Positions 1 through 42,992 of a stretch of DNA of 64,000 bases are shown here, in pieces. Under the pieces are notes generated by a model. That model was not told the origin of the DNA and made no database searches. It worked only from the letters and a program-made list of their open reading frames with translations. The first letter of the stretch is position 1; each line of letters begins with the position of its first letter. The translations under genes and the position numbers were made by a program. Source of the DNA: Podarcis melisellensis (taxonomy: Eukaryota); assembly GCA_964234715.1 (NCBI GenBank), contig OZ174281.1; one strand, given 5' to 3'.

Positions 1-1548
1 GATAGTGCCAGTCTCAGAATTAATGGAGAGGAAGGATGAGAGGGGCAGCCCCTCAGTGATGCTGCTGCGAATGGAGTAGGTGATTTGAGCATTCTGATCC
101 ACATCTGGGTCAGAGGCTTTGACCCTGAAAATGGAGGAGCCTGAAGGATTGTTCTCTGGGACATAGGCAGTATAATAGGGTTTCTCAAAGGCAGGGCGGT
201 TGTCATTGATGTCAGAGATCTGCAGTGTGATGGCTTTGTATGTGGAAAGAGGGGGGTTGCCTTTGTCTGTGGCTGTGACTGTGATATTGTACTCTGGAGT
301 TCTTTCTCTGTCCAAGGGGGCATCTGTGAGAAGCTTATAATAATTATTGGAGGCTGATACCATCTTGAATGGCAAATTGTGTTGTAAATCACAAGCAATC
401 TTCCCATTATCTCCAGAGTCTCTATCATTTACATTGATAAGGGCTACCAGGGTTCCTACTGCAGAGTCTTCAAGGATGGGGCTGGATAAAGAGGCAAGAA
501 TCACTTCTGGGGCATTGTCATTCTCATCTAGAAGTATTATTTCAACTTTACAGTGAGCCACTAATCCACCTCCATCTCTTGCTTCCACTGCCATCACATA
601 TCCTTCTGTTTCCTCAAAGTCCAGAACCTCCTTAACTATAATTGTTCCATCTTGTGAACCCAAGTGGAACTTTTGACGAGCACTTTCAGGGATGTTACTA
701 AAACTATAGTTTATCTGGGCATTTGAACCATCATCTCTATCTGTGGCTTTCACCTGGACCACCAATGACCCTTTGGGGGCATTTTCTTTCAGCTTGACCG
801 CGTATATTTTTTGAGTGAAGACTGGTGGGTTGTCATTTGCATCAATGACGGTGATCCATATTTTGGCTGTTCCAGATTTGGCAGGCTTCCCTCCATCCAG
901 TGCCGTAAGGATTAATTGGAAACTGCTTTCACTTTCCCGATCCAACTGTTTATTCAACACTAATTCTGCATATTTCTTTCCGCCTTCTATTTCTCTCACT
1001 TCCAGAATAAAGTATGGATTTGTGCTAAGGTTGTAATCCTGGAGAGAATTCACCCCAAGATCAGGATCTTCAGCTTGTCCAAGGAGAAATGTGGTGCCTT
1101 GTAAAGACAATTCACTTGTCTCCAGCTTGATATCCCCATTTACAAAAAGTGGTGCATTATCATTAATGTCTTGGATCTCTACAGTTATATGAAAAATATT
1201 CATAGGACTTCCAACCACCACTTCAAAATTGATGGAGCAGATTGCAGTTTGACCACATAATTCCTCTCTATCAATCCTTTCCCTTACATACAGATTTCCA
1301 TTTTCTGCACTGAGAGTAAAGTATTGCTTTTTACCTAGGGAAAGGATATGCAGATTGTAATTTCCTATTTCTCCATTATTCAGGCTCAGGTCTTTAGCTA
1401 GGTTTCCCACAATGGAGCCCTTTTCCATTTCCTCAGGGATGGAATAATGAATGTGCTCTGAGCCAATCTGACCACACAGAGAGAATAATAAGAGGAGAGG
1501 TACTTGCCTTCTTAGGGATCTGCTGCTATCTTTCTGTCTGCCGGCCAT
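1..1548 (-). CDS. PCDHGB: Protocadherin gammaB-like variable exon A1 (5' part: signal peptide to EC5; continues past the left window edge)
   Basis: Absent from the ORF track. Hand translation from ATG 1548 gives 516 open codons (MAGRQKDSSRSLRRQVPLLLLF...DINDNAP...LDRE...SINSETGTI). Paralogue of 23309-25711 at offset 24163. Symbol is family-level only. Confidence 0.93.
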   Translation of the reverse strand, partial: MAGRQKDSSRSLRRQVPLLLLFSLCGQIGSEHIHYSIPEEMEKGSIVGNLAKDLSLNNGEIGNYNLHILSLGKKQYFTLSAENGNLYVRERIDREELCGQTAICSINFEVVVGSPMNIFHITVEIQDINDNAPLFVNGDIKLETSELSLQGTTFLLGQAEDPDLGVNSLQDYNLSTNPYFILEVREIEGGKKYAELVLNKQLDRESESSFQLILTALDGGKPAKSGTAKIWITVIDANDNPPVFTQKIYAVKLKENAPKGSLVVQVKATDRDDGSNAQINYSFSNIPESARQKFHLGSQDGTIIVKEVLDFEETEGYVMAVEARDGGGLVAHCKVEIILLDENDNAPEVILASLSSPILEDSAVGTLVALINVNDRDSGDNGKIACDLQHNLPFKMVSASNNYYKLLTDAPLDRERTPEYNITVTATDKGNPPLSTYKAITLQISDINDNRPAFEKPYYTAYVPENNPSGSSIFRVKASDPDVDQNAQITYSIRSSITEGLPLSSFLSINSETGTI

Positions 1549-1802
1549 CCCTCTTGCAGAGAAATGTGTTTTATCCTTTCTTTCTGTGATTAGTTAAATT
1601 GAGGCGTATTAAATCCCATTCACTCTGTAGAAGTGTTCAATAAAGAATCATGAACGAAGTCAGTAGCTGCTGCTGGATTTCTATACTTTGCAGTGGCTTT
1701 GTTCCTGTGTTCTGCTGTTTCCCAGCTCTGTAGTTTGTTCATGAGCAATCAAATTGCAAAAGCATCTGGTAGTGGATTCTCCACTCCTCCATGAGAACTA
1801 TA

Positions 1803-1846
1803 TTGGCCAACAGTGACACTCTGAGTCTTAGATGGGGAACTGCAAG
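1803..1846 (-). promoter_or_regulatory. CSE (CTCF-type promoter element) of A1, CACT variant
   Basis: Minus strand TGCAGTTCCCCATCTAAGACTCAGAGTGTCACTGTTGGCCAA. The same motif recurs at similar distance before all 11 ATGs. Confidence 0.8.
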
Positions 1847-4640: not shown

Positions 4641-4745
4641 CTCCTCTTATTCCATAACTGCTAAAAATAGAATAAAAAATTCTGCAGAAATGTGGGGAAG
4701 GGTTTCAAAGGTGCAATACAAAGAATTCCTAACCATAAAGCTTAC

Positions 4746-7166
4746 CTCTTCATCCTTAGCCTTTTCAGACTGAAAATTGTTTCCACTGTTGCCTGTAAAA
4801 GGCACATCAGGTTTCTCACTGCCAAGAATATTGTCTACCATCTGAACATTGGGTGTCAGGAAGGCAAACTCATTCTTCCTGGTCTCAGAAGACAGACAGA
4901 GCTGGTAGGAATAGGGCAAAGTCCCATCTTCAAAGTTGGGTGGGAAGATGGCACCATTCTTGGAATGGGGAACAGGACCAAAGCACTGTAGGAACCTGGG
5001 ATGCCCTGACTGACGGAGCTTCATTGTAACGGCCAGAATCACAGTCAAGAGGAACAAGAAGGAGATCACAGCTAAGGCCAGCACCAAGTAGAACTGCAGG
5101 TCAGACTGATACTCCGAGCTGTTGGCTTGGCTCTTCATTTCCGGAAGGGCCTCCTGAAAGTTCTCAGCAAACACCAGGTTCAGAGTCATGGTGGCCGAGA
5201 GAGACGGCTGCCCGTTATCCTTCACCATAATGACCAGTCTCTGTTTCACAGCGTCTCTCTCCACAAAGGCCCTGGCGGTCCTGATCTCTCCAGTATGAGA
5301 ACCAACCGTGAAGAGTGCCGGCTCAGTGGCCTGAGTCAGGTGGTAGGAGAGCCAGGCGTTGTGTCCAGAATCTGCATCCACGGCCACCACCTTGGTGACA
5401 AGATAATCTGCCTCGGCCGAACGAGGCACCATCTCAAACAAGGCTGAGCCCTTGGCTTCTTGTGAGGGGGACAGGATACGAGGGCTGTTATCATTCCTGT
5501 CAAACACAAACACCCTGACGGTCACATTGCTGCTGAGAGGGGGAGAACCCCCATCTTGGGCCTTCACTTGCACCCGAAACTCTCTGAATTGTTCATAGTC
5601 AAAGGATCTCTGGGCATAGATGGTGCCGGTCTCTGAATTAATGGAGATATAGGAGGAGATGGGAAGCTCCTCGATGTTGCTGTTGAGTATGGAGTATGTG
5701 ATCCGTGAGTTCTGGTCCATGTCGGAATCAGAGGCTTTGATGGTGAAAATGGAGGCACCTGAAGGATTGTTTTCTGGCACGTAGATGTTGTAGGATGGCT
5801 TCTGAAATGTAGGGGCATTATCATTGATATCTGAGATCTGTAGAGAGATTGTTTTGTGTGTGGAAAGAGGTGGAGTTCCTCTGTCAGTGGCTGTGATTGT
5901 AATATTGTATGCAGGAGCTATTTCTCTGTCCAAAGGACTGTCTGTCTGGAGCTTGAAGTAATTGTTTGATGAGGGAAGAACTTTGAAAGGTAAATCATCT
6001 TGTAAGTAGCAAGTAACTTTTCCATTATCTCCACTATCTTTGTCATTTACATTGATCAGAGCAATGACAGTTCCTGGCAGAGAATCCTCAGGAACAGGGC
6101 TGGACATGGAGGCTAACGTCACTTCTGGGGCATTATCATTCCCATCAAGAACATTTATTTCAATGTTGCAGTGTGTCACTAATCCACCTCCATCCTTTGC
6201 TGCTGCTGTCATAGTATATCTTCTTGTTTCCTCAAAATCCAACATCTGCAGAAGAGAGATTATGCCATCAACTGGATCCAGGCCAAATTTCTTTTGTCCA
6301 TTCACGGGAATGTTGCTGAATTCATATCTGATCTGGGCGTTTAAACCATCATCTTTGTCAGAGGCTACAACTTGGAGCACAAAGGACCCAACAGGAGCTT
6401 CTTCATGCACACTGACCTTGTACACCTCTTGAGTGAAAACAGGTGGGTTGTCATTGGCATCTGTGACATTAATCCATATCTGGGCAGTCCCAGTTTTTCT
6501 GGGTTCACCCCCATCCAAGGCTGTAAGGATCAAGTGAAAAGAGTACTCGCTTTCCCGATCCAAAGATTTCTGCAGCACCAATTCTGCATTTTTATTTCCA
6601 TCTTCCATTTCTCTAACTTCCAAAGTGAAGTACTGATTGGAGCTTAACTGGTAATTCTGGAGGGAATTCATTCCAATGTCAGGATCTTCAGCTTTCCCAA
6701 GGAGAAAGCGGGCCCCAGGTAAAGTGGATTCAATTATATCCAAGTTGATGTTATCATTGGGAAACAGTGGTGCATTATCATTAATGTCCTGAATTGCTAT
6801 AGTTAAATGGAAGATATTTAGGGGATTTTCAACCACCACTTCAAAATTTACTACGCAAATGGGAGTTATGTCACATAGCTGCTCCCTATCTATTCTGTCA
6901 CTTACATAGAGGTTTCCATTCTCTGCATTAATACTGAAATACTGCATTTTCTTCAAAGAGACAGCATGCAGATTGCGCTTTGCAAGATCTCTTGTATTCA
7001 ATCCCAAATCCTTGGCAATATTCCCCACAATCGAACCCTTTGCCATCTCCTCAGGGATAGAATAACGAATCTGCTCTGAGGCAGCCCAGCAGGAAGGCGA
7101 CAAAAGTAAGAGAAGCAGTACTTGCCTTCTGAGCGCTCTGCCATTGTCTTTGTGCCTTCTGTCCAT
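4746..7166 (-). CDS. PCDHGB: Protocadherin gammaB-like variable exon B1 (807 codons)
   Basis: Six cadherin repeats (PE, LDRE, DxNDNxP), TM, cytoplasmic [11 protein letters not shown]. True ATG at 7166 (track starts at an upstream TTG). Donor GAG|GTAAG at 4746/4745, phase 0; unspliced ORF runs to 4647. Confidence 0.95.
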
Positions 7167-11106: not shown

Positions 11107-13521
11107 CATATCAGCTCTATCCATCTCAAAAATTAGGATATTGCCTCCATTGGCAGTCAAAGGTGTATCAGTGTTGCTTGAAATATTCTCTGCGGTTTGA
11201 ACATTGGGTGTTGGAAAGGTGAACTCCTGTACCCTGGACTCAGAAGATAAGCACAGCTGATAGGAATACGGCAATGTTCCTTCTTCATAGTTTGGTGGGA
11301 AAATGACTGTGTTGTTTGAATGGGGAACAGGAGCAAAACACTGCAGGAATTTGGGATTCCCTGATCGCCGAATCTTCATGAGAATGGCCAGAATCACTGT
11401 CAGGAGGAATAAGAAGGAGATCAAAGCTAAGGCCAGCACCAAGAAGAACTGTAGATCCGATTGATACTCGGAGTCACTGGGCTGGTGGCTAATTTCTGGA
11501 AGTGCCTCCTGGAAGTTCTCAGCAAACACCAGGTTGAGACTCACGGTAGCAGATAGTGGTGGCTGCCCATTATCCTTGACTAAGATGATGAGCTTCTGCT
11601 TCACAGCATCTCTTTCCAGAAAAGCCCGTGAGGTCCTGATCTCCCCAGTATGGGAACCAATTGAGAACAGCCCAGGTTCTGTTGCCTGGAGCAGATAGTA
11701 GGAGAGCCAAGCGTTGTGTCCAGAGTCAGCATCCACAGCCACCACCTTGGTCACCAGATAACCCTCCTCTGCTGAGCGAGGCACCATCTCAAACAAGGAG
11801 GAGCCCTCTACTCCTTGAGAAGGATAAAGAATCTGAGGGCTTTGGTCATTCTGGTCCAGAATACACAGTCTCACGGTGGCATTGCTGCTGAGGCGGGGGG
11901 AGCCTCCATCTTCGGCCCTCACCTCCACTTGAAACTCCCTGACTTGCTCATAGTCAAAGGAGCGCTGAGCATAGATAGTGCCAGTCTCAGAATTAATGGA
12001 GAGGAAGGACGAGAGAGGCAGCCCCTCAGTGATGCTGCTGCGAATGGAGTAGGTGATTTGAGCATTCTGGTCCACATCTGGGTCGGAGGCTTTGACCCTA
12101 AAAATGGAGGAGCCTGAAGGATTGTTCTCTGGGACATAGGCAGTATAATAGGGTTTCTCAAAGGCAGGGCAGTTGTCATTGATGTCAGAGATCTGCAGTG
12201 TGATGGTTTTGTATGTGGAAAGAGGGGGGTTGCCTTTGTCTGTGGCTGTGACTGTGATATTGTACTCTGGAGTTCTTTCTCTGTCCAAGGGGGCGTCTGT
12301 GAGAAGCTTATAATAATTATTGGAGGCTGATACCATTTTGAATGGCAAAGTGTGTTGTATGTCACAAGCAATCTTCCCATTATCTCCAGAGTCTCTATCA
12401 TTTACATTGATAAGGGCTACCAGGGTTCCTACTGCAGAGTCTTCAGGGATGGGGCTGGATAAAGAGGCAAGAATCACTTCTGGAGCATTGTCATTCTCAT
12501 CTAGGAGTGTTATTTCAACATTGCAGTGAGCGGCTAATCCTCCCCCATCTCTTGCTTCCACTGCAATTGCATATTCTTCTATTTCCTCAAAGTCCAGAGC
12601 CTCTTTAAGTGTTATTGTCCCATCTTGTGGATCCAGGTAGAATTTCTGGCGAGCACTTTCAGGGTTGTTACTAAAACTATAGTTTATCTGGGCATTTGAA
12701 CCATCATCTCTATCTGTGGCTTTCACCTGGACCACTGAAGACCCTTTGGGGGTATTTTCTTTCAGCTTGACTGTGTATACTTTTTGCGTGAAGACTGGTG
12801 GGTTGTCATTTGCATCAATGACAGTGATCCATATTTTGGCTGTTCCAGTTTTGGCAGGCTTCCCTCCATCCAGCGCCGTAAGGATTAATTGGAAACTGCC
12901 TTCACTTTCCCGATCCAACTGTTTATTCAATACTAATTCTGCATATTTCTTTCCATCCTTTCTTTCTCTCACTTCCAGAATAAAGTATGGATTTGTGCTA
13001 AGGTTGTAATCCTGGAGAGAATTCACCCCAAGATCAGGATCTTCAGCTTGTCCAAGGAGAAATGTGGTGCCTTTTAAAGACAATTCACTTGTCTCCAGCT
13101 TGATATCCCCGTTTACAAAATGTGGTGCATGATCATTTATGTCTTGGATCTCTACAGTTATATGAAAAATATTCATAGGGCTGTCAAGCACCACTTCAAA
13201 ATTGATGGAGCAGAATGCAGTTTGACCACATAATTCCTCTCTATCAATCCTCTCCCTTACATACAAATTCCCATTTTCTGCACTGAGAGTAAAGTATTGC
13301 TTTTTACCTAGGGAAAGGATATGCATATTGCCATTTCCTATTTCTCTGTTATTCAATCTCAGGTCTTTGGCTAGGTTTCCCACAATGGATCCCTTTTCCA
13401 TTTCTTCAGGGATGGAATAATGAATGTGCTCTGAGGCAATCTGACCACACAGAGAGAATAGTAAGAGGAGAGGTACTTGCCTTCTTACTGATCTGCTGTT
13501 TTTCTTCTGCCTATCTTCCAT
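11107..13521 (-). CDS. PCDHGB: Protocadherin gammaB-like variable exon C1 (805 codons)
   Basis: Six EC repeats, TM, GTLPYSY. Donor ATG|GTGAGT at 11107/11106, phase 0; unspliced ORF to 11038. Confidence 0.95.
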
Positions 13522-15981: not shown

Positions 15982-15984
15982 TGT

Positions 15985-16124: not shown

Positions 16125-16253
16125 NNNNNNNNNNNNNNNNNNNNNNNNNNNNNNNNNNNNNNNNNNNNNNNNNNNNNNNNNNNNNNNNNNNNNNNNNNNN
16201 NNNNNNNNNNNNNNNNNNNNNNNNNNNNNNNNNNNNNNNNNNNNNNNNNNNNN
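16125..16253. other. Assembly gap (129 N)
   Basis: N run; the paralogous interval 40260-40361 contains (CA)n and (GA)n tracts. Confidence 0.99.
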
Positions 16254-16463: not shown

Positions 16464-18884
16464 CTCTTCATCTTTATTCATCTCAGCTTGACAATTATTT
16501 TCTCGGTTGCCTGTAAATGGCACAGCAGGATTCCCACTGCCAAGAATATTGTCTGCAATCTGAACATTGGGTGTCAGGAAGGCAAACTCATTCTTCCTGG
16601 TCTCAGAAGATAGACACAGCTGGTAGGAATAGGGCAAAGTCCCATCTTCAAAGTTGGGTGGGAAGATGGCACCATTCTTGGAATGGGGAACAGGACCAAA
16701 GCACTGTAGGAACCTGGGATGCCCTGACTGACGGAGCTTCATTGTAACGGCCAGAATCACAGTCAAGAGGAACAAGAAGGAGATCACAGCTAAGGCCAGC
16801 ACCAAGTAGAACTGCAGGTCAGACTGATACTCCGAGCTGTTGGCTTGGCTCTTCATTTCCGGAAGGGCCTCCTGAAAGTTCTCAGCAAACACCAGGTTCA
16901 GAGTCATGGTGGCCGAGAGAGACGGCTGCCCGTTATCCTTCACCATAATGACCAGTCTCTGTTTCACAGCGTCTCTCTCCACAAAGGCCCTGGCGGTCCT
17001 GATCTCTCCAGTATGAGAACCAACCATGAAGAGTGCCGGCTCAGTGGCCTGAGTCAGGTGGTAGGAGAGCCAGGCGTTGTGTCCAGAATCTGCATCCACG
17101 GCCACCACCTTGGTGACAAGATAATCTGCCTCGGCCGAACGAGGCACCATCTCAAACAAGGCTGAGCCCTTGGCTTCTTGTGAGGGGGACAGGATACGAG
17201 GGCTGTTATCATTCCTGTCAAGAACAAACACCCTGACGCTCACATTGCTGCTGAGAGGGGGAGAACCCCCATCTTGGGCCTTCACTTGCACCCGAAACTC
17301 TCTGAATTGTTCATAGTCAAAGGATCTCTGGGCATAGATGGTGCCAGTCTCAGAATTAATGGAGATATAGGAGGAGATGGGAAGCTCCTCGATGTTGCTG
17401 TTGAGGATGGAGTATGTGATCCGTGAGTTCTGATCCGTATCTGGATCAGAAGCTTTGATGGTGAAAATGGAGGCACCTGAAGGATTGTTTTCTGGCACGT
17501 AGATGTTGTAGGATGGTTTCTGAAATGTAGGGGCATTATCATTGATATCTGAGATCTGTAGAGAGATTGTTTTGTGTGTGGAAAGAGGTGGAGTTCCTTT
17601 ATCAATTGCTGTGATTGTAATATTATATGCAGGAGTTCTTTCTCTGTCCAGGAGACTGTCTGTCTGGAGCTTGAAGTAATTGTTAGATGACGGAAGAACT
17701 TTGAAGGGTAAATCATCTTGTAGGTAGCAAGTAACCTTTCCATTATCTCCACTATCTCTGTCATTTACATTGATCAGAGCAATGACTGTTCCTGACATAG
17801 AATCTTCCGGAACTGGGCTAAACATGGAGGCTAAAGTAACCTCTGGGGCATTATCATTCTCATCACGAACGCTTATTTCAACTTTGCAATGTGTCACTAA
17901 TCCACCACCATCTTTGGCTGCTACTGATATAGTATATTCACTGATATCCTCAAAGTCCAATAACCCTATAAGTAGGATTGAGCCATTCAATGGATCTAGA
18001 CTGAATTTCTTGTTGGCATTCTGTGGTATATTACTAAAATAATACCTGATTTGGGCGTATGAACCTTCATCATTATCAGATGCTGTAACCTGGAGCACAA
18101 GCGATCCAACTGCAACACTTTCCCTCAAACTGACCTTGTAAACCTCTTGTGTGAAAACTGGGGGGTTGTCATTGGCATCTGTGACATTAATCCATATCTG
18201 GGCAGTCCCAGTTTTTCTAGGTTCACCCCCATCCAACGCTGTGAGAATCAAGTGAAGGGTCTGTTCGGTCTCTCGGTCTAGTGCTTTCTGCAGCACTAAA
18301 TCTGCAAATTTATTTCCATCATGAGTCTCTTTAACATCCAGAGTAAAATACTGATTCGAGCTAAGGTGGTAATTCTGGAGAGCATTCATCCCAATGTCAG
18401 GATCTTCAGCTTTCCCAAGGAAAAACCGTGTTCCTAACAAAGTTAGTTCACTTGTTTCTAAGTTGATATTGCCACTGAGAAAGAATGGCGCATTGTCATT
18501 TATATCTTGAATTGTAATAGTCACATGAAAAATATTAAGGGGATTTTCCATTACCACCTCAAAATTAACAAGACAGAGTGGAGTTGTGCCACATATTTCC
18601 TCTCTGTCAATCCTGTCATTTACATAGAGATTTCCATTTTCTGCATTGATACTGAAATACTGCATTTTGTTCACAGAGACAGCATGCAGATTGCGCCTTC
18701 CTAGATCTCTGGCATTCAGTCCCAAATCCTCAGCAAGATTCCCCACAATTGAACCCTTTGGCTTCTCCTCAAGGATAGAATAACGAATCTGCTCTGAGGC
18801 AGCCCAGCCGGAGAAAGGCAAAAATAAGAGAAGCAGTACTTGCCTTCTGAGTGCCATTCCATTGTTTTTGTTTCTTCTATCCAT
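16464..18884 (-). CDS. PCDHGB: Protocadherin gammaB-like variable exon D1 (807 codons)
   Basis: Six EC repeats, TM, GTLPYSY. Donor GAG|GTAAG at 16464/16463; unspliced ORF to 16263. Confidence 0.95.
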
Positions 18885-19958: not shown

Positions 19959-19959
19959 G

Positions 19960-23308: not shown

Positions 23309-25711
23309 CATATCAGCATTATCCATCTCAGAATTTAGGATATTGCCTCCATTGGCAGTCAAAGTCACATTAGACTTATCTGCGATTTGAACATTGGGTG
23401 TTGGAAAGGTGAACTCCTGTACCCTGGACTCAGAAGATAAGCACAGCTGATACGAATATGGCAATGTTCCTTCTTCATAGTTTGGTGGGAAAATGACTGT
23501 GTTGTTTGAATGGGGAACAGGAGCAAAACACTGCAGGAATTTGGGGTTCCCTGATCGCCGAATCTTCATGAGAATGGCCAGAATTACTGTCAGGAGGAAT
23601 AAGAAGGAGATCAAAGCTAAGGCCAGCACCAAGAAGAATTGTAGATCCGATTGATACTTGGAGTCACTGGGCTGGTGGCTAATTTCCGGAAGTGCCTCCT
23701 GGAAGTTCTCAGCAAACACCAGGTTGAGACTCACGGTAGCAGACAGTGGTGGCTGCCCATTATCCTTGACTAAGATGATGAGCTTCTGCTTCACAGCATC
23801 TCTTTCCAGAAAAGCCCGTGAGGTCCTGATCTCCCCAGTATGGGAGCCAATTGAGAACAGCCCAGGTTCTGTTGCCTGGAGCAGATAGTAGGAGAGCCAA
23901 GCGTTGTGTCCAGAGTCAGCATCCACAGCCACCACCTTGGTCACCAGATAACCCTCCTCTGCTGAGCGAGGCACCATCTCAAACAAGGAGGAGCCCTCTA
24001 CTCCTTGAGAAGGGTAAAGAATCTGAGGGCTTTGGTCATTCTGGTCCAGAATACACACTCTCACGGTGGCATTGCTGCTGAGGCGGGGGGAGCCTCCATC
24101 TTCGGCCCTCACCTCCACTTGAAACTCCCTGACTTGCTCATAGTCAAAGGAGCGCTGAGCATAGATAGTGCCAGTCTCAGAATTAATGGAGAGGAAGGAC
24201 GAGAGAGGCAGCCCCTCAGTGATGCTGCTGCGAATGGAGTAGGTGATTTGAGCATTCTGGTCCACATCTGGGTCGGAGGCTTTGACCCTGAAAATGGAGG
24301 AGCCTGAAGGATTGTTCTCTGGGACATAGGCAGTATAATAGGGTTTCTCAAAGGCAGGGCAGTTGTCATTGATGTCAGAGATCTGCAGTGTGATGGTTTT
24401 GTATGTGGAAAGAGGGGGGTTGCCTTTGTCTGTGGCTGTGACTGTGATATTGTACTCTGGAGTTCTTTCTCTGTCCAAGGGGGCATCTGTGAGAAGCTTA
24501 TAATAATTATTGGAGGCTGATACCATTTTGAATGGCAAAGTGTGTTGTATGTCGCAAGTAATCTTCCCATTATCTCCAGAGTCTCTATCATTTACATTGA
24601 TAAGGGCTACCAGGGTTCCTACTGCAGAGTCTTCAGGGATTGGGCTGGACAAAGAGGCCAGAATCACTTCTGGCGCATTGTCATTCTCATCTAGGAGTGT
24701 TATTTGAACTTTACAGTGAGCCACCAATCCACCTCCATCTCTTGCTTCCACTGCCATCACATATCCTTCTGTTTCCTCAAAGTCCAGAACCTCCTTAACT
24801 ATAATTGTTCCATCTTGTGAACCCAGGTAGAATTTCTGGCGAGCAATTTCAGGGATGTTACTAAAACTATAGTTGATCTGGGCATTTGAACCATCATCTC
24901 TATCTGTGGCTTTCACCTGGACCACTGATGATCCTTTGGGGGTATTTTCTTTCAGATTGACTGTGTATACTTTTTGTGTGAAGACTGGTGGGTTGTCATT
25001 TGCATCAATGACGGTGATCCATATTTTGGCTGTTCCAGTTTTGGCAGGCTTCCCTCCATCCAGCGCCGTTAGGATTAATTGGAAACTGCTCTCACTTTCC
25101 CGATCCAACTGTTTATTCAACACTAATTCTGCATATTTCTTTCCGCCTTCTATTTCTCTCACTTCCAGAATAAAGTATGGATTTGTGCTAAGGTTGTAAT
25201 CCTGGAGAGAATTCACCCCAAGATCAGGATCTTCAGCTTCTCCAATAAGAAATGTGGTGCCTGGTAAGGAGGATTCAATTATTCCCAGTTTTATATCCCC
25301 ATTTACAAAACGTGGTGCATGATCATTTATGTCTTGAATCTCTACAGTTATATGAAAAATATTCATAGGACTTCCAACCACCACTTCAAAATTGATGGAG
25401 CAGAATGCAGTTTGACCACATAATTCCTCTCTATCAATCCTTTCCCTTACATACAGATTTCCATTTTCTGCACTGAGAGTAAAGTATTGCTTTTTACCTA
25501 GGGAAAGGATATGCAGATTGTAATTTCCTATTTCTCCATTATTCAGGCTCAGGTCTTTAGCTAGGTTTCCCACAATGGAGCCCTTTTCCATTTCCTCAGG
25601 GATGGAATAATGAATGTTCTCTGAGGCAATCTGACCACACAGAGAAAATAGTAAGAGGAGAGGTACTTGCCTTCTTAGGGATCTGCTGCTATCTTTCTGT
25701 CTGCCGGCCAT
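23309..25711 (-). CDS. PCDHGB: Protocadherin gammaB-like variable exon A2 (801 codons)
   Basis: Six EC repeats, TM, GTLPYSY. Donor ATG|GTGAGT at 23309/23308; unspliced ORF to 23279. Confidence 0.95.
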
Positions 25712-28908: not shown

Positions 28909-31329
28909 CTCTTCATCCTTAGCCTTTTCAGACAGAAAATCGTTTCCACTGTTGCCTGTAAATGGCGCAGCAGGTTTTTCACTGCCAATAATATTGTCTA
29001 CCATCTGAACACTGGGTGTCAGGAAGGCAAACTCATTCTTCCTGGTCTCAGAAGACAGACACAGCTGGTAGGAATAGGGCAAAGTCCCATCTTCAAAGTT
29101 GGGTGGGAAGATGGCACCATTCTTGGAATGGGGAACAGGGCCAAAGCACTGTAGGAACCTGGGATGCCCTGATTGACGGAGCTTCATTGTAACGGCCAGA
29201 ATCACAGTCAAGAGGAACAAGAAGGAGATCACAGCTAAGGCCAGCACCAAGTAGAACTGCAGGTCAGACTGATACTCCGAGCTGTTGGCTTGGCTCTTCA
29301 TTTCCGGAAGGGCCTCCTGAAAGTTCTCAGCAAACACCAGGTTCAGAGTCATGGTGGCCGAGAGAGACGGCTGCCCGTTATCCTTCACCATAATGACCAG
29401 TCTCTGTTTCACAGCATCTTTCTCCACAAAGGCCCTGGCTGTCCTGATCTCTCCAGTATGAGAACCAACCGTGAAGAGTGCCGGCTCAGTGGCCTGAGTC
29501 AGGTGGTAGGAGAGCCAGGCGTTGTGTCCAGAATCTGCATCCACGGCCACCACCTTGGTGACAAGATAATCTGCCTCGGCCGAACGAGGCACCATCTCAA
29601 ACAAGGCTGAGCCCTTGGCTTCTTGTGAGGGGGACAGGATACGAGGGCTGTTATCATTCCTGTCAAGAACAAACACCCTGACGCTCACATTGCTGCTGAG
29701 AGGGGGAGAACCCCCATCTTGGGCCTTCACTTGCACCCGAAACTCTCTGAATTGTTCATAGTCAAAGGATCTCTGGGCATAGATGGTGCCGGTCTCTGAA
29801 TTAATGGAGATATAGGAGGAGATGGGAAGCTCCTCGATGTTGCTGTTGAGTATGGAGTATGTGATCCGTGAGTTCTGGTCCATGTCGGGATCAGAGGCTT
29901 TGATGGTGAAAATGGAGGCACCTGAAGGATTGTTTTCTGGCACATAGATGTTGTAGGATGGCTTCTGAAAGGTAGGGGCATTATCATTGATATCTGAGAT
30001 CTGGAGAGAGATTGTTTTGTGTGTGGAAAGAGGCGGAGTTCCTCTGTCAGTGGCTGTGATTGTAATATTATATGCAGGAACTATTTCTCTGTCCAATGGA
30101 CTGTCTGTCTGGAGTTTGAAGTAATTATTAGATGAGGGAAGAATTTTGAAGGGTAAACCATCTTGTAAGTAGCAAGTAACCTTTCCATTATCACCACTAT
30201 CTTTGTCATTTACATTGATCAGAGCAATGACAGTTCCTGGCAGAGAATCCTCAGGAACTGGGCTGAACATGGAGGCTAACGTCACTTCTGGGGCATTATC
30301 ATTCCCATCAAGAACATTTATTTCAATGTTGCAGTGTGTCACCAATCCACCTCCATCCTTTGCTGCTGCTGTCATAGTATATCTTCTTGTTTCCTCAAAA
30401 TCCAACATCTGCAGAAGGGAGATTATGCCATCAACTGGATCCAGGCCAAATTTCTTTTGTCCATTCACTGGAATGTTGCTGAATTCATATCTGATCTGGG
30501 CGTTTAAACCATCATCTTTGTCAGAGGCTACAACTTGGAGCACAAAGGACCCAACAGGAGCTTCTTCATGCACACTGACCTTGTACACCTCTTGAGTGAA
30601 GACTGGTGGGTTGTCATTGGCATCTGTGACATTAATCCATATCTGGGCAGTCCCCGTTTTTCTGGGTTCCCCCCCATCCAAGGCTGTAAGGGACAAGTGA
30701 AGAGCGTGCTCACTTTCCCGATCCAAAGATTTCTGCAACACCAGTTCTGCATTTTTACTTCCATCTTCCATTTCTCTAACTTCCAAAGTGAAGTACCGAT
30801 TGGTGCTCAACTGGTAATTCTGGAGGGAATTCATCCCAATGTCAGGATCTTCAGCTTTCCCAAGGAGAAATCGTGCGCCTGGTACAGTAAGTTCACTTGT
30901 CTCCAAGTTGATGTTGCCATTGGGAAACAGTGGTGCATTATCATTAATGTCCTGAATTGCTATAGTTAAATGGAAGATATTGAGGGGATTTTCAACTACC
31001 ACTTCAAAATTTACTACGCAAATGGGAGTTATGTCACATAGCTGCTCCCTATCTATTCTGTCACTTACATAGAGGTTTCCATTCTCTGCATTAATACTGA
31101 AAAACTGCATTTTGTTCACAAAGACAGCATGCAGATTGCGCTTTGCAAGATCTCTTGTATTCAGTCCCAAATCCTTGGCCAGATTCCCCACAATCGAACC
31201 CTTTGCCATCTCTTCAGGGATAGAATAACGAATCTGCTCTGAGGCAGCCCAGCAGGAAGGCGACAAAAGTAAGAGAAGCAGTACTTGCCTTCTGAGTGCT
31301 CTGCCATTGTCGTCGTGTCTTCTGTCCAT
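28909..31329 (-). CDS. PCDHGB: Protocadherin gammaB-like variable exon B2 (807 codons)
   Basis: Duplicate of B1 (offset 24163). Donor GAG|GTAAG at 28909/28908; unspliced ORF to 28810. Confidence 0.95.
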
Positions 31330-35279: not shown

Positions 35280-37700
35280 CATATCAGCTCTATCCATCTC
35301 AGAAATTAGGATATTGCCTCCATTGGCAGTCAAAGGTGCATCAGACTGAGTGTTGCATGAAACATTCCCTGCAGTTTGAAGATTGGGTGTTGGAAAGGTG
35401 AACTCCTGTACCCTGGACTCAGAAGATAAGCACAGCTGATAGGAATACGGCAATGTTCCTTCTTCATAGTTTGGTGGGAAAATGACTGTGTTGTTTGAAT
35501 GGGGAACAGGAGCAAAACACTGCAGGAATTTGGGGTTTCCTGATCGCCGAATCTTCATGAGAATGGCCAGAATCACTGTCAGGAGGAATAAGAAGGAGAT
35601 CAAAGCTAAGGCCAGCACCAAGAAGAATTGTAGATCCGATTGATACTCAGAGTCACTGGGCTGGTGGCTAATTTCTGGAAGTGCCTCCTGGAAGTTCTCA
35701 GCAAACACCAGGTTGAGACTCACGGTAGCAGATAGTGGTAGCTGCCCATTATCCTTGACTAAGATGATGAGCTTCTGCTTCACGGCATCTCTTTCCAGAA
35801 AAGCCCGTGAGGTCCTGATCTCCCCAGTATGGGAACCAATTGAGAACAGCCCAGGTTCTGTTGCCTGGAGCAGATAGTAGGAGAGCCAAGCGTTGTGTCC
35901 AGAGTCAGCATCTACAGCCACCACCTTGGTCACCAGATAACCCTCCTCTGCTGAGCGAGGCACCATCTCAAACAAGGAGGAGCCCTCTACTCCTTGAGAA
36001 GGGTAAAGAATCTGAGGGCTTTGGTCATTCTGATCCAGAATACACAGTCTCACGGTGGCATTGCTGCTGAGGCGGGGGGAGCCTCCATCTTCGGCCCTCA
36101 CCTCCACTTGAAACTCCCTGACTTGCTCATAGTCAAAGGAGCGCTGAGCATAGATAGTGCCAGTCTCAGAATTAATGGAGAGGAAGGATGAGAGAGGCAG
36201 CCCCTCAGTGATGCTGTTGCGAATGGAGTAGGTGATTTGAGCATTCTGGTCCACATCTGGGTCGGAGGCTCTGACCCTGAAAATGGAGGAGCCTGAAGGA
36301 TTGTTCTCTGGGACATAGGCAGTATAATAGGGTTTCTCAAAGGCAGGGCAGTTGTCATTGATGTCAGAGATCTGCAGTGTGATGGTTTTGTATGTGGAAA
36401 GAGGGGGGTTGCCTTTGTCTGTGGCTGTGACTGTGATATTGTACTCTGGAGTTCTTTCTCTGTCCAAGGGGGCGTCTGTAAGAAGCTTATAATAATTATT
36501 GGAGGCTGATACCATCTTGAATGGCAAATTGTGTTGTAAATCACAAGCAATCTTCCCATTGTCTCCAGAGTCTCTATCATTTACATTGATAAGGGCTACC
36601 AGGGTTCCTACTGCAGAGTCTTCAGGGATTGGGCTGGATAAAGACGCCAGAATCACTTCTGGGGCATTGTCATTCTCATCTAGGAGTGAAATTTCAACTT
36701 TACAGTGAGCCACTAATCCACCTCCATCTCTTGCTTCTACTGCCATCACATATCCTTCTGTTTCCTCAAAGTCCAGAGCCTCCTTAAGTGTTATTGTCCC
36801 TTCTTGTGGATCCAAGTAGAATTTCTGGTGAGCAATTTCAGGGATGTTACTAAAATTATAGTTGATGTGAGCATAAGAACCGTCATCTCTATCTGTGGCT
36901 TTCACCTGGACCACTGAAGACCCTTTGGGGGCATTTTCTTTCAGCTTGACTGAGTATACTTTTTGAGTGAAGACTGGTGGGTTGTCATTTGCATCAATGA
37001 CGGTGATCCATATTTTGGCTGTTCCAGTTTTGGCAGGCTTCCCTCCATCCAGCGCCGTTAGGGTTAATTGGAAATTGCTTTCACTTTCCCGATCCAACTG
37101 TTTATTCAATACTAATTCTGCATATTTCTTTCCATCTTCTATTTCTCTCACTTCCAGAATAAAATACTGATTTGAGCTAAGGTGGTAATTCTGGAGAGAA
37201 TTCACCCCAAGATCAGGATCTTCAGCTTGTCCAAGGAGAAATGTGGTGCCTTTTAAAGAGGATTCACTTATCTCCAGCTTTATATCCCCTTTTACAAAAT
37301 ATGGTGCATTATCGTTAATGTCTTGGATCTCTACAGTTATATGAAAAATATTCATAGGGCTGTCAAGCACCACTTCAAAATTGATGGAGCAGATTGCAGT
37401 TTGACCACATAATTCCTCTCTATCAATCCTCTCCCTTACATACAAATTCCCATTTTCTGCACTGAGAGTGAAATATTGTTTTTTACCTAGGGAAAGGATA
37501 TGCAGATTGCCATTTCCTATTTCTCCATTATTCAATCTCAGGTCTTTGGCTAGGTTTCCTACAATGGATCCCTTTTCCATTTCTTCAGGGATGGAATAAT
37601 GAATGTGCTCTGAGACAATCTGACCACACAGAGAGAATAATAGGAGGAGAGGTACTTGCCTTCTGAGGGATCTGCTGTTTTCCTTCTGCCTATCTTCCAT
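35280..37700 (-). CDS. PCDHGB: Protocadherin gammaB-like variable exon C2 (807 codons)
   Basis: Duplicate of C1. Donor ATG|GTGAGT at 35280/35279; unspliced ORF to 35211. Confidence 0.95.
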
Positions 37701-38623: not shown

Positions 38624-38719
38624 TCCATTTACTGAGCTTTCCACTTTACAACAAGTTTGTCTATAAGGAACTCCATTTACTGAGCTTTCCACTTTACAAC
38701 AATTTTGTCTATTTGGAAC
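38624..38719. repeat. 48-bp direct tandem duplication, present only in block 2
   Basis: TCCATTTACTGAGCTTTCCACTTTACAACAA...GGAAC occurs twice; single copy at ~14385-14431 in block 1. Confidence 0.9.
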
Positions 38720-40118: not shown

Positions 40119-40184
<66 letters not shown>

Positions 40185-40278
40185 ACTAAAGACTCCTGCT
40201 CTAAGTAATATTATATACATCAATTAAAAAGGAGAGAACTGATACAAATAAAGGCCAATTTACCATCTCTATTTCCCT

Positions 40279-40324
<46 letters not shown>

Positions 40325-40571
40325 CAGGAGAGAGAGAGAGAAGAATTGCCATGGAGCTTGTGCTATTTTTCTAAAAAAGAATTGTTAGCCTTCCATCCAT
40401 AAGAAAAGGTGGAAAAGGTGTTACTGATTTTGTAACAGTATTGTGTGAATGCTGAGTAAAAAGAAGACAAACTATGGCAATTTCCACAAAAGTATGGAGG
40501 CATTCTGTCTGGATTTTGCTCATTGAAAAACACCATGGCTTACACAAATAATTCTGGATAACAATTCTTAC

Positions 40572-42992
40572 CTCTTCATCTTTATTCATCTCAGCTTGAC
40601 AATTATTTTCTCGGTTGCCTGTAAATGGCACAGCAGGATTCCCACTGCCAAGAATATTGTCTGCAATCTGAACATTGGGTGTCAGGAAGGCAAACTCATT
40701 CTTCCTGGTCTCAGAAGATAGACACAGCTGGTAGGAATAGGGCAAAGTCCCATCTTCAAAGTTGGGTGGGAAGATGGCACCATTCTTGGAATGGGGAACA
40801 GGACCAAAGCACTGTAGGAACCTGGGATGCCCTGATTGACGGAGCTTCATTGTAACGGCCAGAATCACAGTCAAGAGGAACAAGAAGGAGATCACAGCTA
40901 AGGCCAGCACTAAGTAGAACTGCAGGTCAGACTGATACTCCGAGCTGCTGGGTTGGCTCTTCATTTCCGGAAGGGCCTCCTGAAAGTTCTCAGCAAACAC
41001 CAGGTTCAGAGTCATGGTGGCTGAGAGAGACGGCTGCCCGTTATCCTTCACCATAATGACCAGTCTCTGTTTCACAGCGTCTCTCTCCACAAAGGCCCTG
41101 GCTGTCCTGATCTCTCCAGTATGAGAACCAACCGTGAAGAGTGCCGGCTCAGTGGCCTGAGTCAGGTGGTAGGAGAGCCAGGCGTTGTGTCCAGAATCTG
41201 CATCCACGGCCACCACCTTGGTGACAAGATAATCTGCCTCGGCCGAACGAGGCACCATCTCAAACAAGGCTGAGCCCTTGGCTTCTTGTGAGGGGGACAG
41301 GATACGAGGGCTGTTATCATTCCTATTGAGAACAAACACCCTGACGGTCACATTGCTGCTGAGAGGGGGAGAACCCCCATCTTGGGCCTTCACTTGCAGC
41401 CGGAACTCTCTGAATTGTTCATAGTCAAAGGATCTCTGGGCATAGATGGTGCCGGTCTCAGAATTTATGGAGATATAGGAGGAGATGGGAAGCTCCTCGA
41501 TGTTGCTGCTGAGGATGGAGTATGTGATCCGTGAGTTCTGGTCCATGTCGGGATCAGAAGCTTTGATGGTGAAAATGGAGGCACCTGAAGGATTGTTTTC
41601 TGGCACGTAGCTGTTGTAGGATGGCTTCTGAAAGGTAGGGGCATTATCATTGATATCAGCAATCAAAAGTGTGATAGATTTATGTGAGGAGAGAGGGGGA
41701 GTACCATTGTCAGAGGCTGTTACTGAGATATTGTACTCTAGAGCTATTTCTCTGTCCAGGAGACTATCTGTCAGGAGCTTGTAGTAATTGTTAGATGAGG
41801 GAAGAATTCTGAAGGGCAGATCATCCTGTAAATAGCAAGTGACCTTTCCATTATCTCCATTATCTTTGTCATTCAAATTGATCAGAGCTATTAAGGTACC
41901 AGGCAGAGAATCTTCAGAGACTGGGCTAAACAAGGAAACCAGGGTTACCTCGGGGTAATTGTCATTCTCATCAATAACTCTTATTTCAACTTTACAATGT
42001 GTCTCTAACCCACCCCCATCTTTTGCTGCAACTGTCAAAGTGTATTCTTTGGTTTCTTCAAAATCCAGTAGCCCTATAAGTAGGATTGAGCCATTCAAAG
42101 GATCTAGACTGAATTTCTTGTTGGCATTCAGTGGTATATTGCTAAAATGATACCTGATTTGGGCATTTGAACCTTCATCATTATCAGAAGCTGTAACCTG
42201 GAGCACAACTGATCCAACTGCAACACTTTCCCTCAAACTGACCTTGTACACCTCTTGAGTGAAAACAGGTGGGTTGTCATTGGCATCTGTGACATTAATC
42301 CATATCTGGGCAGTCCCAGTTTTTCTAGGTTCACCCCCATCCAACGCTGTGAGGATCAAGTGAAGGGTCTGTTCGGTCTCTCGATCTAATGGTTTCTGCA
42401 GCACTAAATCTGCAAATTTATTTCCATCATAAGTCTCCTTAACATCCAAAGTCAAATATTTATTAGAGCTCAGCTGGTAATTCTGGAGTGAATTCATCCC
42501 TATGTCAGGATCTTCAGCTTTCCCAAGAAGAAATCTGGTGCCTGGCAAAGTGGATTCCACAATCTCTAAGTTGATATTAATTTTCAAAAAATGTGGCGTA
42601 TTGTCATTAATATCCTGAATTTCCACAGTTATATGGAAAACATTTAAGGGATTTTCAATCACCACCTCAAAATTAACCAGGCAGAGTGGAGTTGTGCCAC
42701 ATATTTCCTCTCTATCAATCCTATCATTTACATAGAGGTTTCCATTTTCTGCATTGATATTGAAATACTGCATTTTATTCACAGAGACAGCATGCAGATT
42801 GCGCCTTCCTAGATCTCTGGCATTCAGTCCCAAATCCTTGGCGAGATTCCCCACAATCGAACCCTTTGCCATCTCCTCAGGGATAGAATAGCGAATCTGT
42901 TCTGAGGCAGCCCAGCAGGAGAAAGGCAAAAATAAGAGAAGCAGTACTTGCCTTCTGAGTGCCATTCCATCTTCTTTCTGCCTTCTGTCCAT
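40572..42992 (-). CDS. PCDHGB: Protocadherin gammaB-like variable exon D2 (807 codons)
   Basis: ATG (MDRRQKEDG) at 42992; the track's 43058 start is a TTG. Donor GAG|GTAAG at 40572/40571; unspliced ORF to 40371. Confidence 0.95.

What the first reader, a model, noticed from the sequence alone, without database searches (positions are those of the whole stretch)
1085..42580. A two-state micro-cassette at the start of EC2 (ETSEL vs I-x-ES) differs in all four duplicate pairs and crosses subfamily lines
Seen: A1 KLETSELSLQG vs A2 KLGIIESSLPG; B1 [11 protein letters not shown] vs B2 [11 protein letters not shown]; C1 KLETSELSLKG vs C2 KLEISESSLKG; D1 [11 protein letters not shown] vs D2 [11 protein letters not shown]. 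The nucleotide tract TTCACTTGTCTCCA (plus strand) is shared by A1 (~1111), C1 (~13084) and B2 (~30892), and GGATTCAATTAT by B1 (~6726) and A2 (~25271), although A/C and B/D are different subfamilies. Established: the N-terminal strands of EC2 contribute to the EC2:EC3 trans interface. Inference: a very short specificity switch moved by micro-conversion, so that each twin carries the opposite state.
Basis: partly seen in the sequence, partly recalled or inferred. Interest (0 to 1): 0.8.

Follow-up and report, generated by a model that had tools for sequence, protein, structure and literature searches.

The report
Protocadherin twin genes differ at interface patch
In a wall-lizard-type genome, a recently duplicated block of four neuronal "barcode" (protocadherin) genes differs in every copy pair at the same two residues. 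One of the two is a residue known in mouse to sit in the cell-cell recognition surface. The differences were copied in as short stretches from related genes, not passed between the two gene subfamilies.

Summary
Eight gammaB-like clustered-protocadherin variable exons form two tandem D-C-B-A blocks. All four twin pairs differ at two codons (T/I and L/S) in the first strand of EC2. These are the only 2 of 516 comparable codons that differ in all four pairs.

Lacerta agilis has one D-C-B-A block. The single Podarcis lilfordi block recovered is equally distant from both window blocks. The window blocks differ by 0.4-0.7% in A-B-C intergenic DNA, against 3.4-4.5% to Podarcis.

Twin exons are 3.4-4.1% diverged, with synonymous divergence of 8-30%. 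Of the twin-specific derived bases, 48-80% already exist in same-subfamily paralogs, against 7-10% expected by chance. The differences were therefore copied from other genes in short conversion tracts of 11-236 nt.

Transfer across subfamilies is not supported. The Leu codons differ (TTG, CTT, CTA), subfamily-specific silent sites interleave with the patch, and identical runs of 14 nt or more are commonplace. Both states are old: LETSEL occurs across squamates, and family-wide the patch has many states.

The S/L site aligns with mouse beta6/beta8 S117I and gammaA8 I116, known trans-interface residues.

It is a real hotspot of diversifying short-tract conversion. A specificity switch is plausible but untested.

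The parts
1..1548 (-). A1, K-type gammaB-like protocadherin variable exon (first 516 codons; cut by the window start); patch KLETSELSLQG at 1093-1128
   Evidence: 96% identical to P. muralis P0180, which carries the same patch
4746..7166 (-). B1, N-type variable exon (ATG 7166, donor GT at 4745); patch [11 protein letters not shown] at 6711-6746
11107..13521 (-). C1, K-type variable exon; patch KLETSELSLKG at 13066-13101
   Evidence: Pfam Cadherin_2 + 5 Cadherin + Cadherin_C_2; E=1.9e-161 to gammaB4 structure 6e6b
16464..18884 (-). D1, N-type variable exon; patch [11 protein letters not shown] at 18429-18464
   Evidence: mosaic of a D backbone, a B-like EC4 and a patch tract of unknown source
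23309..25711 (-). A2, twin of A1; patch KLGIIESSLPG at 25256-25291
28909..31329 (-). B2, twin of B1; patch [11 protein letters not shown] at 30874-30909, identical in all 30 bases to the P. lilfordi B exon
35280..37700 (-). C2, twin of C1; patch KLEISESSLKG at 37245-37280, identical in all 30 bases to the P. lilfordi C exon
40572..42992 (-). D2, twin of D1; patch [11 protein letters not shown] at 42537-42572, one base different from the L. agilis D exon
25240..25292 (-). Conversion tract in A2: 11 derived bases in 53 nt (upper bound 25092-25327). At protein level it matches the IIESSLPGTTFLIGE haplotype of another K-type paralog (P. muralis P0013)
6708..6738 (-). Conversion tract in B1: 11 derived bases in 31 nt (upper bound 6673-6818). 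N-type donor; the state resembles the L. agilis B exon
13081..13091 (-). Micro-tract in C1: I to T (ATA to ACA) and S to L (TCC to TTG), 3 bases in 11 nt. C1 is identical to A1 over at most 36 nt here
1108..1109 (-). A1 Ser-to-Leu change (TCC to TTG) relative to the A exons of P. lilfordi and L. agilis. The same codon is present in C1 and in the L. agilis K5 exon
18422..18552 (-). Conversion tract in D1: 40 derived bases in 131 nt (30% divergence), covering the patch. The donor is not in the sample
16125..16253 (.). Assembly gap, in the intron 210 nt downstream of the D1 splice donor. It does not affect any exon or patch

Best explanation
The window holds part of the gammaB-like protocadherin cluster of a lacertid lizard close to Podarcis. 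A four-gene unit D-C-B-A is present twice in tandem here. It is present once in Lacerta agilis, and the one Podarcis lilfordi block recovered is equally distant from both window copies.

The A-B-C part of the two copies became identical recently. Since then the exons, but not the DNA between them, have picked up many short stretches copied from other protocadherin exons of the same subfamily. This is ectopic gene conversion with tracts of about 11 to a few hundred nt.

At the start of EC2 these imports replaced one old allele of a five-residue patch by another in one twin of each pair: C1, B1, A2 and D1, plus a Ser-to-Leu change in A1. As a result every pair now differs at residues 112 and 115 (gammaB numbering).

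Both alleles are ancient and exist separately in each subfamily, with their own codons. Nothing was passed between subfamilies.

Residue 115 follows the calcium-binding Glu of the EC2 A strand. It is the column of mouse beta6/beta8 S117I and of gammaA8 I116. Residue 111 beside it contacts EC3 residue 294. The patch therefore lies in the EC2:EC3 trans-recognition surface.

Shown: the duplication, the copied origin of the differences, the within-subfamily donors, the age of the alleles, and the structural column.

Inferred: that the flips were kept because they make new twins less alike in homophilic recognition.
For: Gene family:
- Cadherin_2 + 5 Cadherin + Cadherin_C_2.
- Best solved relatives are gammaB4, gammaB2 and gammaB3.
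- Best database hits are lacertid 'protocadherin gamma-B5-like' proteins at 92-94% identity.

Duplication:
- 13.9 kb aligns at 97.6% between the blocks.
- Intergenic divergence between blocks is 0.42% and 0.72%. It is 3.4-4.5% to P. lilfordi and 7.2-8.8% to L. agilis.
- L. agilis has the order E-D-C-B-A-N5-K5 with one block. P. lilfordi has D-C-B-A-N5.

Excess exon divergence:
- Substitutions are 3.4-4.1% in the twin exons and 1.0% in non-coding DNA.
- Twin pS is 0.08-0.10 overall, 0.12-0.16 in EC2-3, and 0.09-0.33 around the patch in the A, B and C pairs (0.72 in D). pN/pS is 0.2-0.9.

Copied origin:
- 48-80% of twin-specific derived bases are present in a same-subfamily paralog, against 7-10% by chance (p from 4e-9 to 1e-97).
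- Bases found only in the other subfamily are at chance level.

Polarity at the patch:
- B2 equals the P. lilfordi B exon and C2 equals the P. lilfordi C exon, base for base. D2 is nearly identical to the L. agilis D exon.
- The derived clusters lie in B1, C1, A2 and D1.
- The A2 tract equals the P. muralis P0013 haplotype.

Age of the alleles:
- LETSEL occurs in geckos, skinks, anguids, iguanians, Rhineura and lacertids.

Acceleration:
- The patch state is conserved in 4 of 5 L. agilis / P. lilfordi orthologue pairs but in 0 of 4 twin pairs. By hand, Fisher one-sided p = 0.04, although the twins have had 10-20 times less time.

Interface position:
-.
Against: - The donors of the D1 tract and of the B1 tract are not in the sampled DNA. 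The A2 donor is known only as a protein from another species.
- The D part of the blocks is 6-12% diverged in its flanks, and D1 has an unrelated upstream region. The history is therefore not one clean duplication.
- P. muralis has several A/C-like genes, whose EC2-EC3 regions group one-to-one with A1, A2 and C1. This could mean an older duplication.
- If conversion shuffles a pool in which both states are common, four out of four differing pairs has a probability of about 0.06-0.1 without any selection.
- Family-wide the two sites rank only about 100th of 428 in variability.
- B1 and B2 have identical EC3 domains. On a simple additive view an EC2-only change cannot create homophilic preference.
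- The homodimer prediction gave no verdict.
Confidence: 0.7

Rival explanations
1. Old duplication with homogenised flanks. On this view the two blocks predate the split from Podarcis. The exon differences, including the patch states, are retained old divergence. Only the DNA between the exons was recently homogenised by exchange between the blocks, and selection removed any event that made the EC1-EC4 parts of twins identical.
For: - In the EC2-EC3 tree, A1 pairs with P. muralis P0180, A2 with P. raffonei P0011 and P. lilfordi A, and C1 with P0190/P0186.
- Twin exon divergence (3.4-4.1%) equals the exon divergence to P. lilfordi (3.2-4.7%).
- The C-D intergenic DNA is 6-12% diverged between blocks.
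- Non-coding differences are patchy, with 17 in 600 bp at 8401-9000.
Against: - The P. lilfordi block is no closer to block 1 than to block 2, in exons or in intergenic DNA. Its patch states match B2 and C2 of block 2 but A1 of block 1.
- L. agilis has a single block.
- Homogenisation would have to stop at exon edges. There are no differences in the 900 bp at 1801-2700, a few hundred bases upstream of the A exon, but 15-20 per 300 bp inside it.
- Twin pS is 2-4 times the non-coding distance to Podarcis.
- The tree rests on a handful of residues that include the conversion tracts themselves.
Confidence: 0.15
2. A cassette of 15 nt or less, with two states (ETSEL or I-x-ES), is moved by micro-conversion between any of the genes, including between the A/C and B/D subfamilies.
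For: - The 14-nt and 12-nt tracts are shared across subfamilies at exactly the stated places.
- The T codon is ACA in all four ETSEL genes and the S codon is TCC in all four others.
- The patch lies between two of the longest cross-subfamily identity runs, a 23-nt run at DINDNAP and a 16-nt run at AEDPD. These could anchor short heteroduplexes.
Against: - The Leu codon, half of the 'cassette', is TTG, CTT or CTA depending on the gene.
- L110 and residue 116 keep subfamily-specific codons directly beside the patch, and twin-pattern sites interleave with it.
- Runs of 14 nt or more occur 5-10 times per cross-subfamily pair.
- Derived bases found only in the other subfamily are at chance level, p = 0.09-0.84.
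- The haplotypes of B2 and N5 (CTT, with T116 and V117) and of A1, C1 and K5 (TTG) are each conserved within their own lineage across genera.
- The patch is not two-state family-wide.
Confidence: 0.05
3. Parallel point mutations under positive selection. Each twin gained its state by new mutations, with no copying from other genes.
For: - I to T needs only one transition.
- The different Leu codons could reflect independent origins.
Against: - Ser TCC to Leu needs 2-3 changes per gene, while neutral divergence is only 0.4-0.7%.
- The changes come with clusters of silent differences: pS is 0.09-0.33 around the patch in the A, B and C pairs, and pN/pS is below 1.
- The derived bases already exist in paralogs far more often than chance allows.
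Confidence: 0.03
4. Assembly artefact. The two blocks would be two haplotypes, or a collapsed and then re-expanded repeat, wrongly placed in tandem near the gaps.
For: - Non-coding divergence of 0.4-0.7% is in the range of heterozygosity in wild lizards (my own knowledge).
- A gap lies at the D1/C1 join (16125-16253) and another at 46142-46269.
Against: - D1, the junction, A2, B2, C2 and D2 lie on one gap-free stretch, 16254-46141, which therefore holds two D genes.
- The gap flanks are collinear with block 2.
- Exon pS of 8-30% between alleles of one locus would be extraordinary.
- Each twin's patch haplotype is found in other species.
Confidence: 0.05

Closest known systems
Mouse Pcdh-beta6 / beta8 specificity residues (R41N, S117I, L125P, E369K, Y371F; Goodman et al. 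2016 Neuron, 2022 eLife PMC8901172)
   Same: - The window's S/L site is the same alignment column as beta6 S117 / beta8 I117, the residue after the calcium-binding Glu of the EC2 A strand.
- The chemistry is the same: a small polar residue against a large aliphatic one.
- Both cases involve very similar paralogs.
   Different: - In mouse, five residues in EC1, EC2 and EC4 were needed together, and most single-residue mutants kept beta6 behaviour.
- The lizard twins differ at 22-68 residues across EC1-EC4.
- Nothing has been assayed here.
Gene conversion in clustered protocadherin genes (Noonan et al. 2004; summarised in PMC4978886 and PMC2764143)
   Same: - Tandem variable exons exchange sequence.
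- EC5-EC6-TM are homogenised, at 98-100% within each subfamily here.
- EC2-EC3 hold the diversity.
   Different: - The published picture is of conversion as a homogeniser that spares EC2-EC3. The anole gamma-b genes were reported to show little conversion.
- Here short tracts inside EC2 make young duplicates different, and they hit one interface patch in all four pairs.
Trans-interface mutants gammaA8 I116R and gammaC5 S116R (Rubinstein et al. 2015, as cited in PMC8901172)
   Same: gammaA8 I116 aligns to the S/L site. The gammaC5 chain numbering gives the same column by offset. Mutating this residue abolishes trans binding.
   Different: Those are engineered disruptive Arg substitutions. They are not natural alternatives that keep binding.
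Diversifying micro-conversion in MHC and other multigene families (my own knowledge)
   Same: Short copied tracts move old polymorphisms between paralogs and raise diversity at recognition residues.
   Different: Here the exchange is between tandem alternative first exons of one transcription unit. What diversifies is the set of isoforms within one genome, not the alleles in a population.

Membership tests
Clustered protocadherin, gammaB-like variable exon | One large exon encoding a signal peptide, six cadherin repeats, a TM segment and a short cytoplasmic stub | tested here: met
   ORFs of 804-895 aa. Pfam Cadherin_2 + 5 Cadherin + Cadherin_C_2. Aligned over EC1-EC4, and partly EC5-EC6, to gammaB4 6e6b with E=1.9e-161.
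Clustered protocadherin, gammaB-like variable exon | Tandem array on one strand, each exon ending in a 5' splice donor for joining to shared constant exons | tested here: met
   Eleven exons, all on the minus strand. A GTAAG or GTGAG donor sits at the conserved position of each of the ten complete exons. The constant exons lie outside the window. I did not build a spliced model.
Clustered protocadherin, gammaB-like variable exon | Closest relatives are gammaB isoforms rather than alpha, beta, gammaA or C-type | tested here: met
   The top solved relatives are gammaB4, gammaB2, gammaB3 and gammaB7. The database names are 'protocadherin gamma-B5/B1-like'. Exons E and G of the window are gammaA-like.
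Clustered protocadherin, gammaB-like variable exon | Conserved sequence element (CSE) promoter upstream of each exon | not tested
Not examined here.
Specificity-determining trans-interface residue (sense of Goodman et al.) | The residue lies in the EC1-EC4 antiparallel trans interface | tested here: met
   By alignment only. The S/L site is the column of beta6/8 residue 117 and of gammaA8 I116. Residue 111 is reported to contact residue 294. No structure of the lizard protein exists, and the dimer prediction gave no verdict.
Specificity-determining trans-interface residue (sense of Goodman et al.) | Varies between isoforms but is conserved among orthologues of one isoform | tested here: inconclusive
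   The state is conserved in 4 of 5 L. agilis / P. lilfordi orthologue pairs. The B locus and the A-like genes of three Podarcis species differ.
Specificity-determining trans-interface residue (sense of Goodman et al.) | Swapping it changes homophilic recognition | not testable with these tools
   This needs cell-aggregation, SPR or AUC assays.
Ectopic (interparalog) gene conversion | Clustered differences that include silent sites, whose derived states already exist in a paralog, bounded by unchanged flanks | tested here: met

The most novel reading that the evidence does not exclude
After a tandem duplication of protocadherin genes, selection quickly fixes short conversion tracts that flip a two-residue patch of the EC2:EC3 recognition surface. 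Each new twin thereby gains a homophilic specificity distinct from its sister. On this reading, diversifying micro-conversion of pre-existing alleles, rather than new mutation, is how new neuronal 'barcode' isoforms become functionally distinct.
Probability: 0.3. Interest if true: 0.7.

Novelty: new variant of a known kind. Interest (0 to 1): 0.5.

Why it matters
How a freshly duplicated protocadherin isoform stops recognising its sister is an open step in explaining how these clusters expand their recognition repertoire.

This locus offers four natural twin pairs only about 0.5% apart in neutral DNA. In each pair the most consistent difference sits on a residue already shown in mouse to help set specificity. 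In one pair, B1/B2, EC3 is identical.

That makes a small, well-defined set of constructs for aggregation or SPR assays.

It also shows conversion acting inside EC2 as a diversifier. The published view is that conversion homogenises EC4-EC6 and spares EC2-EC3.

Tried and rejected
- Complex prediction on two copies of C1 EC1-EC4 gave 'no answer' (score 0.00, no contacts listed). It is no evidence either way.
- I tested whether D1 is an unequal-crossover hybrid of N5 and D. It is not: D1 is D-like over its first 1 kb and only 77-86% identical to N5.
- In the first 174 database hits T112 almost never occurred with S115, which suggested the two residues are coupled. ETSES in L. agilis, P. muralis, P. 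lilfordi and Rhineura genes removed that idea.
- Residue 294, the reported partner of residue 111, is an invariant Gly in all eleven window exons (read by eye). No covariation could be tested.
- The shuffle-based expectation printed by the DNA search is not a valid null for homologous genes. I used run lengths between homologues instead.
- Several key papers could not be read: Rubinstein 2015, Goodman 2016 Neuron, Noonan 2004 and Wu 2005. Their content is cited only through papers that were read.
- DNA for the P. muralis gene P0180 could not be fetched because the gene range is 172 kb.
- None of the fetched contigs is human: L001 is P. lilfordi, and L002 and L003 are L. agilis.
- I did not fill the N gaps, and I did not build a joined (spliced) protein model.

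Full report
**What is in the window**

The minus strand carries eleven large ORFs of 804-895 aa, plus one cut by the window start. Each has the Pfam architecture Cadherin_2, five Cadherin repeats and Cadherin_C_2. Each of the ten complete exons ends at a conserved GTAAG or GTGAG splice donor.

The best solved relatives are gammaB4, gammaB2, gammaB3 and gammaB7 protocadherins. The best database hits are 'protocadherin gamma-B5-like' proteins of Zootoca and Podarcis at 92-94% identity.

In the order of transcription the exons are G, F, E, D2, C2, B2, A2, D1, C1, B1, A1. A and C form one subfamily, here called K-type (93-96% nucleotide identity). B and D form another, here called N-type (87-97%). 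The two subfamilies are about 72% identical to each other. The constant exons are outside the window. I searched exons only by reference and built no spliced model.

**The assembly gap**

The N run at 16125-16253 lies 210 nt beyond the D1 splice donor, whose last exon base is 16464. It lies 10 nt beyond the stop of the read-through ORF. The DNA on its two sides is collinear with block 2. It is intronic and irrelevant to the patch. I did not fill it. A second gap at 46142-46269 lies between E and D2.

**The observation**

Window 1-13925 aligns to 24164-38105 at 97.6%, and the alignment continues through D, so the twin pairing is real.

Of 516 codons present in all eight exons, 398 are identical in every pair. 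Only two differ in all four pairs: the T/I codon and the L/S codon three positions later. The windows covering the patch are the top-ranked hotspot of twin differences.

- Random placement weighted by family-wide variability gives P = 0.004 for two or more such codons, and about 0.1 for one or more.
- Circular shifts that preserve each pair's clustering give 0.017-0.019 for one or more.

The hotspot is real, but only moderately improbable if the two linked codons count as one locus.

**The duplication is young and lineage-specific**

I fetched 28 kb of Podarcis lilfordi (L001) and 52 kb of Lacerta agilis (L002 plus L003). L. agilis has the order E-D-C-B-A-N5-K5 with a single D-C-B-A unit. P. 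lilfordi shows D-C-B-A-N5.

Intergenic divergence is as follows:

| Comparison | B-A spacer | C-B spacer |
|---|---|---|
| Window block 1 vs block 2 | 0.42% | 0.72% |
| Window vs P. lilfordi | 3.4-3.5% | 4.4-4.5% |
| Window vs L. agilis | 8.7-8.8% | 7.2-7.4% |

The window species is therefore close to Podarcis. Its A-B-C segments became identical six to eight times more recently than its split from P. lilfordi.

**The exons do not fit that age**

Between the blocks, non-coding DNA has 1.0% substitutions, while exons A, B and C have 3.4-4.1%.

Synonymous divergence between twins is 0.08-0.10 overall and 0.12-0.16 in EC2-EC3. Around the patch it is 0.09-0.33 in the A, B and C pairs (0.72 in D). 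pN/pS is 0.2-0.9. Positive selection on new mutations cannot raise silent divergence, so the differences must be older sequence.

I polarised each twin difference with the P. lilfordi or L. agilis orthologue. Between 48% and 80% of the derived bases already occur in another paralog of the same subfamily. Chance predicts 7-10% (p from 4e-9 to 1e-97). Bases found only in the other subfamily occur at the chance rate, with p = 0.09-0.84.

The changes were therefore copied from same-subfamily paralogs. This is ectopic gene conversion. It is confined to the exons because only the exons are homologous among paralogs.

**What happened at the patch**

- The B2 patch is identical to the P. lilfordi B exon in all 30 bases, including Leu CTT.
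- The C2 patch is identical to the P. lilfordi C exon in all 30 bases.
- The D2 patch differs by one base from the L. agilis D exon.

The changed copies are these:

| Copy | Change | Window position | Source |
|---|---|---|---|
| C1 | 3 bases in 11 nt; at most 36 nt identical to A1 | 13081-13091 | A1-like or K5-like state |
| B1 | 11 bases in 31 nt | 6708-6738 | N-type donor, state as in the L. agilis B exon |
| A2 | 11 bases in 53 nt | 25240-25292 | haplotype of a different K-type gene, P. muralis P0013 |
| D1 | 40 bases in 131 nt | 18422-18552 | donor not sampled |
| A1 | Ser TCC to Leu TTG | 1108-1109 | codon shared with C1 and the L. agilis K5 exon |

So short-tract and even micro-conversion is supported, but each event has a different donor from the recipient's own subfamily.

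**No transfer between subfamilies**

- The Leu codon is TTG in A1 and C1, CTT in B2 and CTA in D1.
- L110 and residue 116 keep subfamily-specific codons directly beside the patch. In the B/D quartet, sites that follow the twin pairing interleave with sites that follow the ETSEL state.
- Exact runs of 14 nt or more occur 5-10 times per cross-subfamily pair in 1.55 kb, and runs of 23-27 nt exist. The shared 14-mer and 12-mer are therefore unremarkable.

One structural point may explain why this spot is exchanged so easily. The patch lies between two of the longest such runs, at the DINDNAP and AEDPD calcium-motif codons. This is an inference.

**The alleles are old and not two-state**

LETSEL occurs in Eublepharis, Gekko, Tiliqua, Elgaria, Pogona, Anolis, Phrynosoma, Rhineura and Podarcis, in both K-like and N-like contexts.

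Lacertid K-type genes show ETSEL, ETSES, EISEL, EISES and EIIES. Family-wide, position 112 is I, T, P, A or V, and position 115 is S, L, F or V. Both positions rank only about 100th of 428 in variability.

The three Leu codons are connected by single silent steps. This fits one old origin followed by drift within each lineage (inference).

**Where the patch sits in the protein**

In gammaB numbering the patch is L110, E111, T/I112, S113, E114, L/S115.

- Goodman et al. 2016 (PMC5106212) report residue 111 as an EC2:EC3 interface residue that pairs with residue 294 and contributes to gammaB specificity.
- Alignment shows that mouse beta6 S117 / beta8 I117, and gammaA8 I116, are the residue directly after the conserved Glu. 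This is the window's L/S site.
- S117I is one of the five interfacial differences that together convert beta6 into beta8. I116R in gammaA8 and S116R in gammaC5 abolish trans binding.

The caveats are real:
- Most single-residue beta6 mutants kept beta6 behaviour.
- B1 and B2 have no amino-acid difference in EC3.
- The residue equivalent to 294 is an invariant Gly here.
- The twins differ at 22-68 positions across EC1-EC4.

**Selection or neutral shuffling?**

The patch state is the same in 4 of 5 L. agilis / P. lilfordi orthologue pairs, which are separated by 7-9% neutral divergence. It is the same in 0 of 4 twin pairs, of which the A, B and C pairs are separated by 0.4-0.7%. By hand, Fisher one-sided p = 0.04, before allowing for the time difference.

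This suggests that flips accelerated after the duplication, as expected if twins that differ are favoured. If instead conversion simply re-equilibrates new copies with a pool in which both states are common, four out of four has a probability of about 0.06-0.1. The data do not decide between the two.

**Complications**

- The D part has an older-looking or more complex history. Its flanks are 6-12% diverged.
- D1 carries a roughly 400-nt B-like tract in EC4.
- The 4.4 kb between A2 and D1 has no counterpart in the other species.
- An EC2-EC3 protein tree pairs A1, A2 and C1 with separate Podarcis proteins. This could mean an older duplication. However, the tree rests on few residues, which include the tracts themselves.

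**Comparison with what is known**

Conversion among clustered protocadherin exons is well known. It is described as homogenising EC4-EC6 while EC2-EC3 escape. The anole gamma-b genes were reported to show little conversion.

Here EC5-EC6-TM are indeed homogenised, at 98-100%. In addition, short tracts inside EC2 diversify young duplicates, and they do so at a residue with experimentally known roles in recognition.

I class this as a new variant of a known kind.

Earlier notes of the scan call this a wall-lizard-type genome, which agrees with my distance estimate.

Noticed in passing
window 18885-23300: The 4.4 kb between exon A2 and exon D1 has no homology to the A-N5 or E-D intergenic DNA of L. 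agilis or P. lilfordi, apart from a dispersed repeat. Homology to P. lilfordi stops at the 3' end of exon A2 (23301), and block homology stops at the D1 ATG (18884). D1 therefore has a different upstream region from D2. Positions 19097-19244 weakly resemble the B promoter region (76%).
   Followed up: partly
window about 17550-17963 (D1 gene nt 922-1335, end of EC3 and EC4): D1 is 87-98% identical to B1 and the L. agilis B exon here, but only 79-85% identical to its twin D2. This is a conversion tract of about 400 nt from a B-type exon.
   Followed up: partly
window 13922-16124 vs 38134-40259: The DNA upstream of C and downstream of D is 6-12% diverged between the two blocks. The A-B and B-C spacers are 0.4-0.7% diverged. 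The blocks therefore do not share one simple age.
   Followed up: partly
window 15193-15528, 21488-21838, 22250-22591, 39337-39668: A dispersed repeat of about 340 bp (84-87% between copies). It is also present in the L. agilis and P. lilfordi loci and is probably a transposable-element fragment.
   Followed up: no
window exons, EC5 to TM (for example 11107-12100 and 35280-36300): EC5, EC6 and the TM region are 98-100% identical within the K-type genes and within the N-type genes. This is strong concerted evolution, in contrast to the 'low frequency of gene conversion' reported for anole gamma-b genes (PMC2764143).
   Followed up: partly
L001:9973-12400 (P. lilfordi B exon): The open frame ends after 611 codons (near L001:11805), although the DNA stays alignable to B1 and B2. 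This is either a frame break in that species or an assembly error.
   Followed up: no
window 16000-16055: A (TG)n(AG)n microsatellite lies about 70 bases before the assembly gap. It is a likely reason for the break in the assembly.
   Followed up: no
window codon columns 104, 148, 308 and 361 (mature numbering) of the eight exons: Besides the patch, a few other residues differ in three of the four twin pairs: the x in AP-x-F just before the patch, residue 148 in EC2, residue 308 in EC3 and residue 361 in EC4. These are candidate secondary diversification sites.
   Followed up: no
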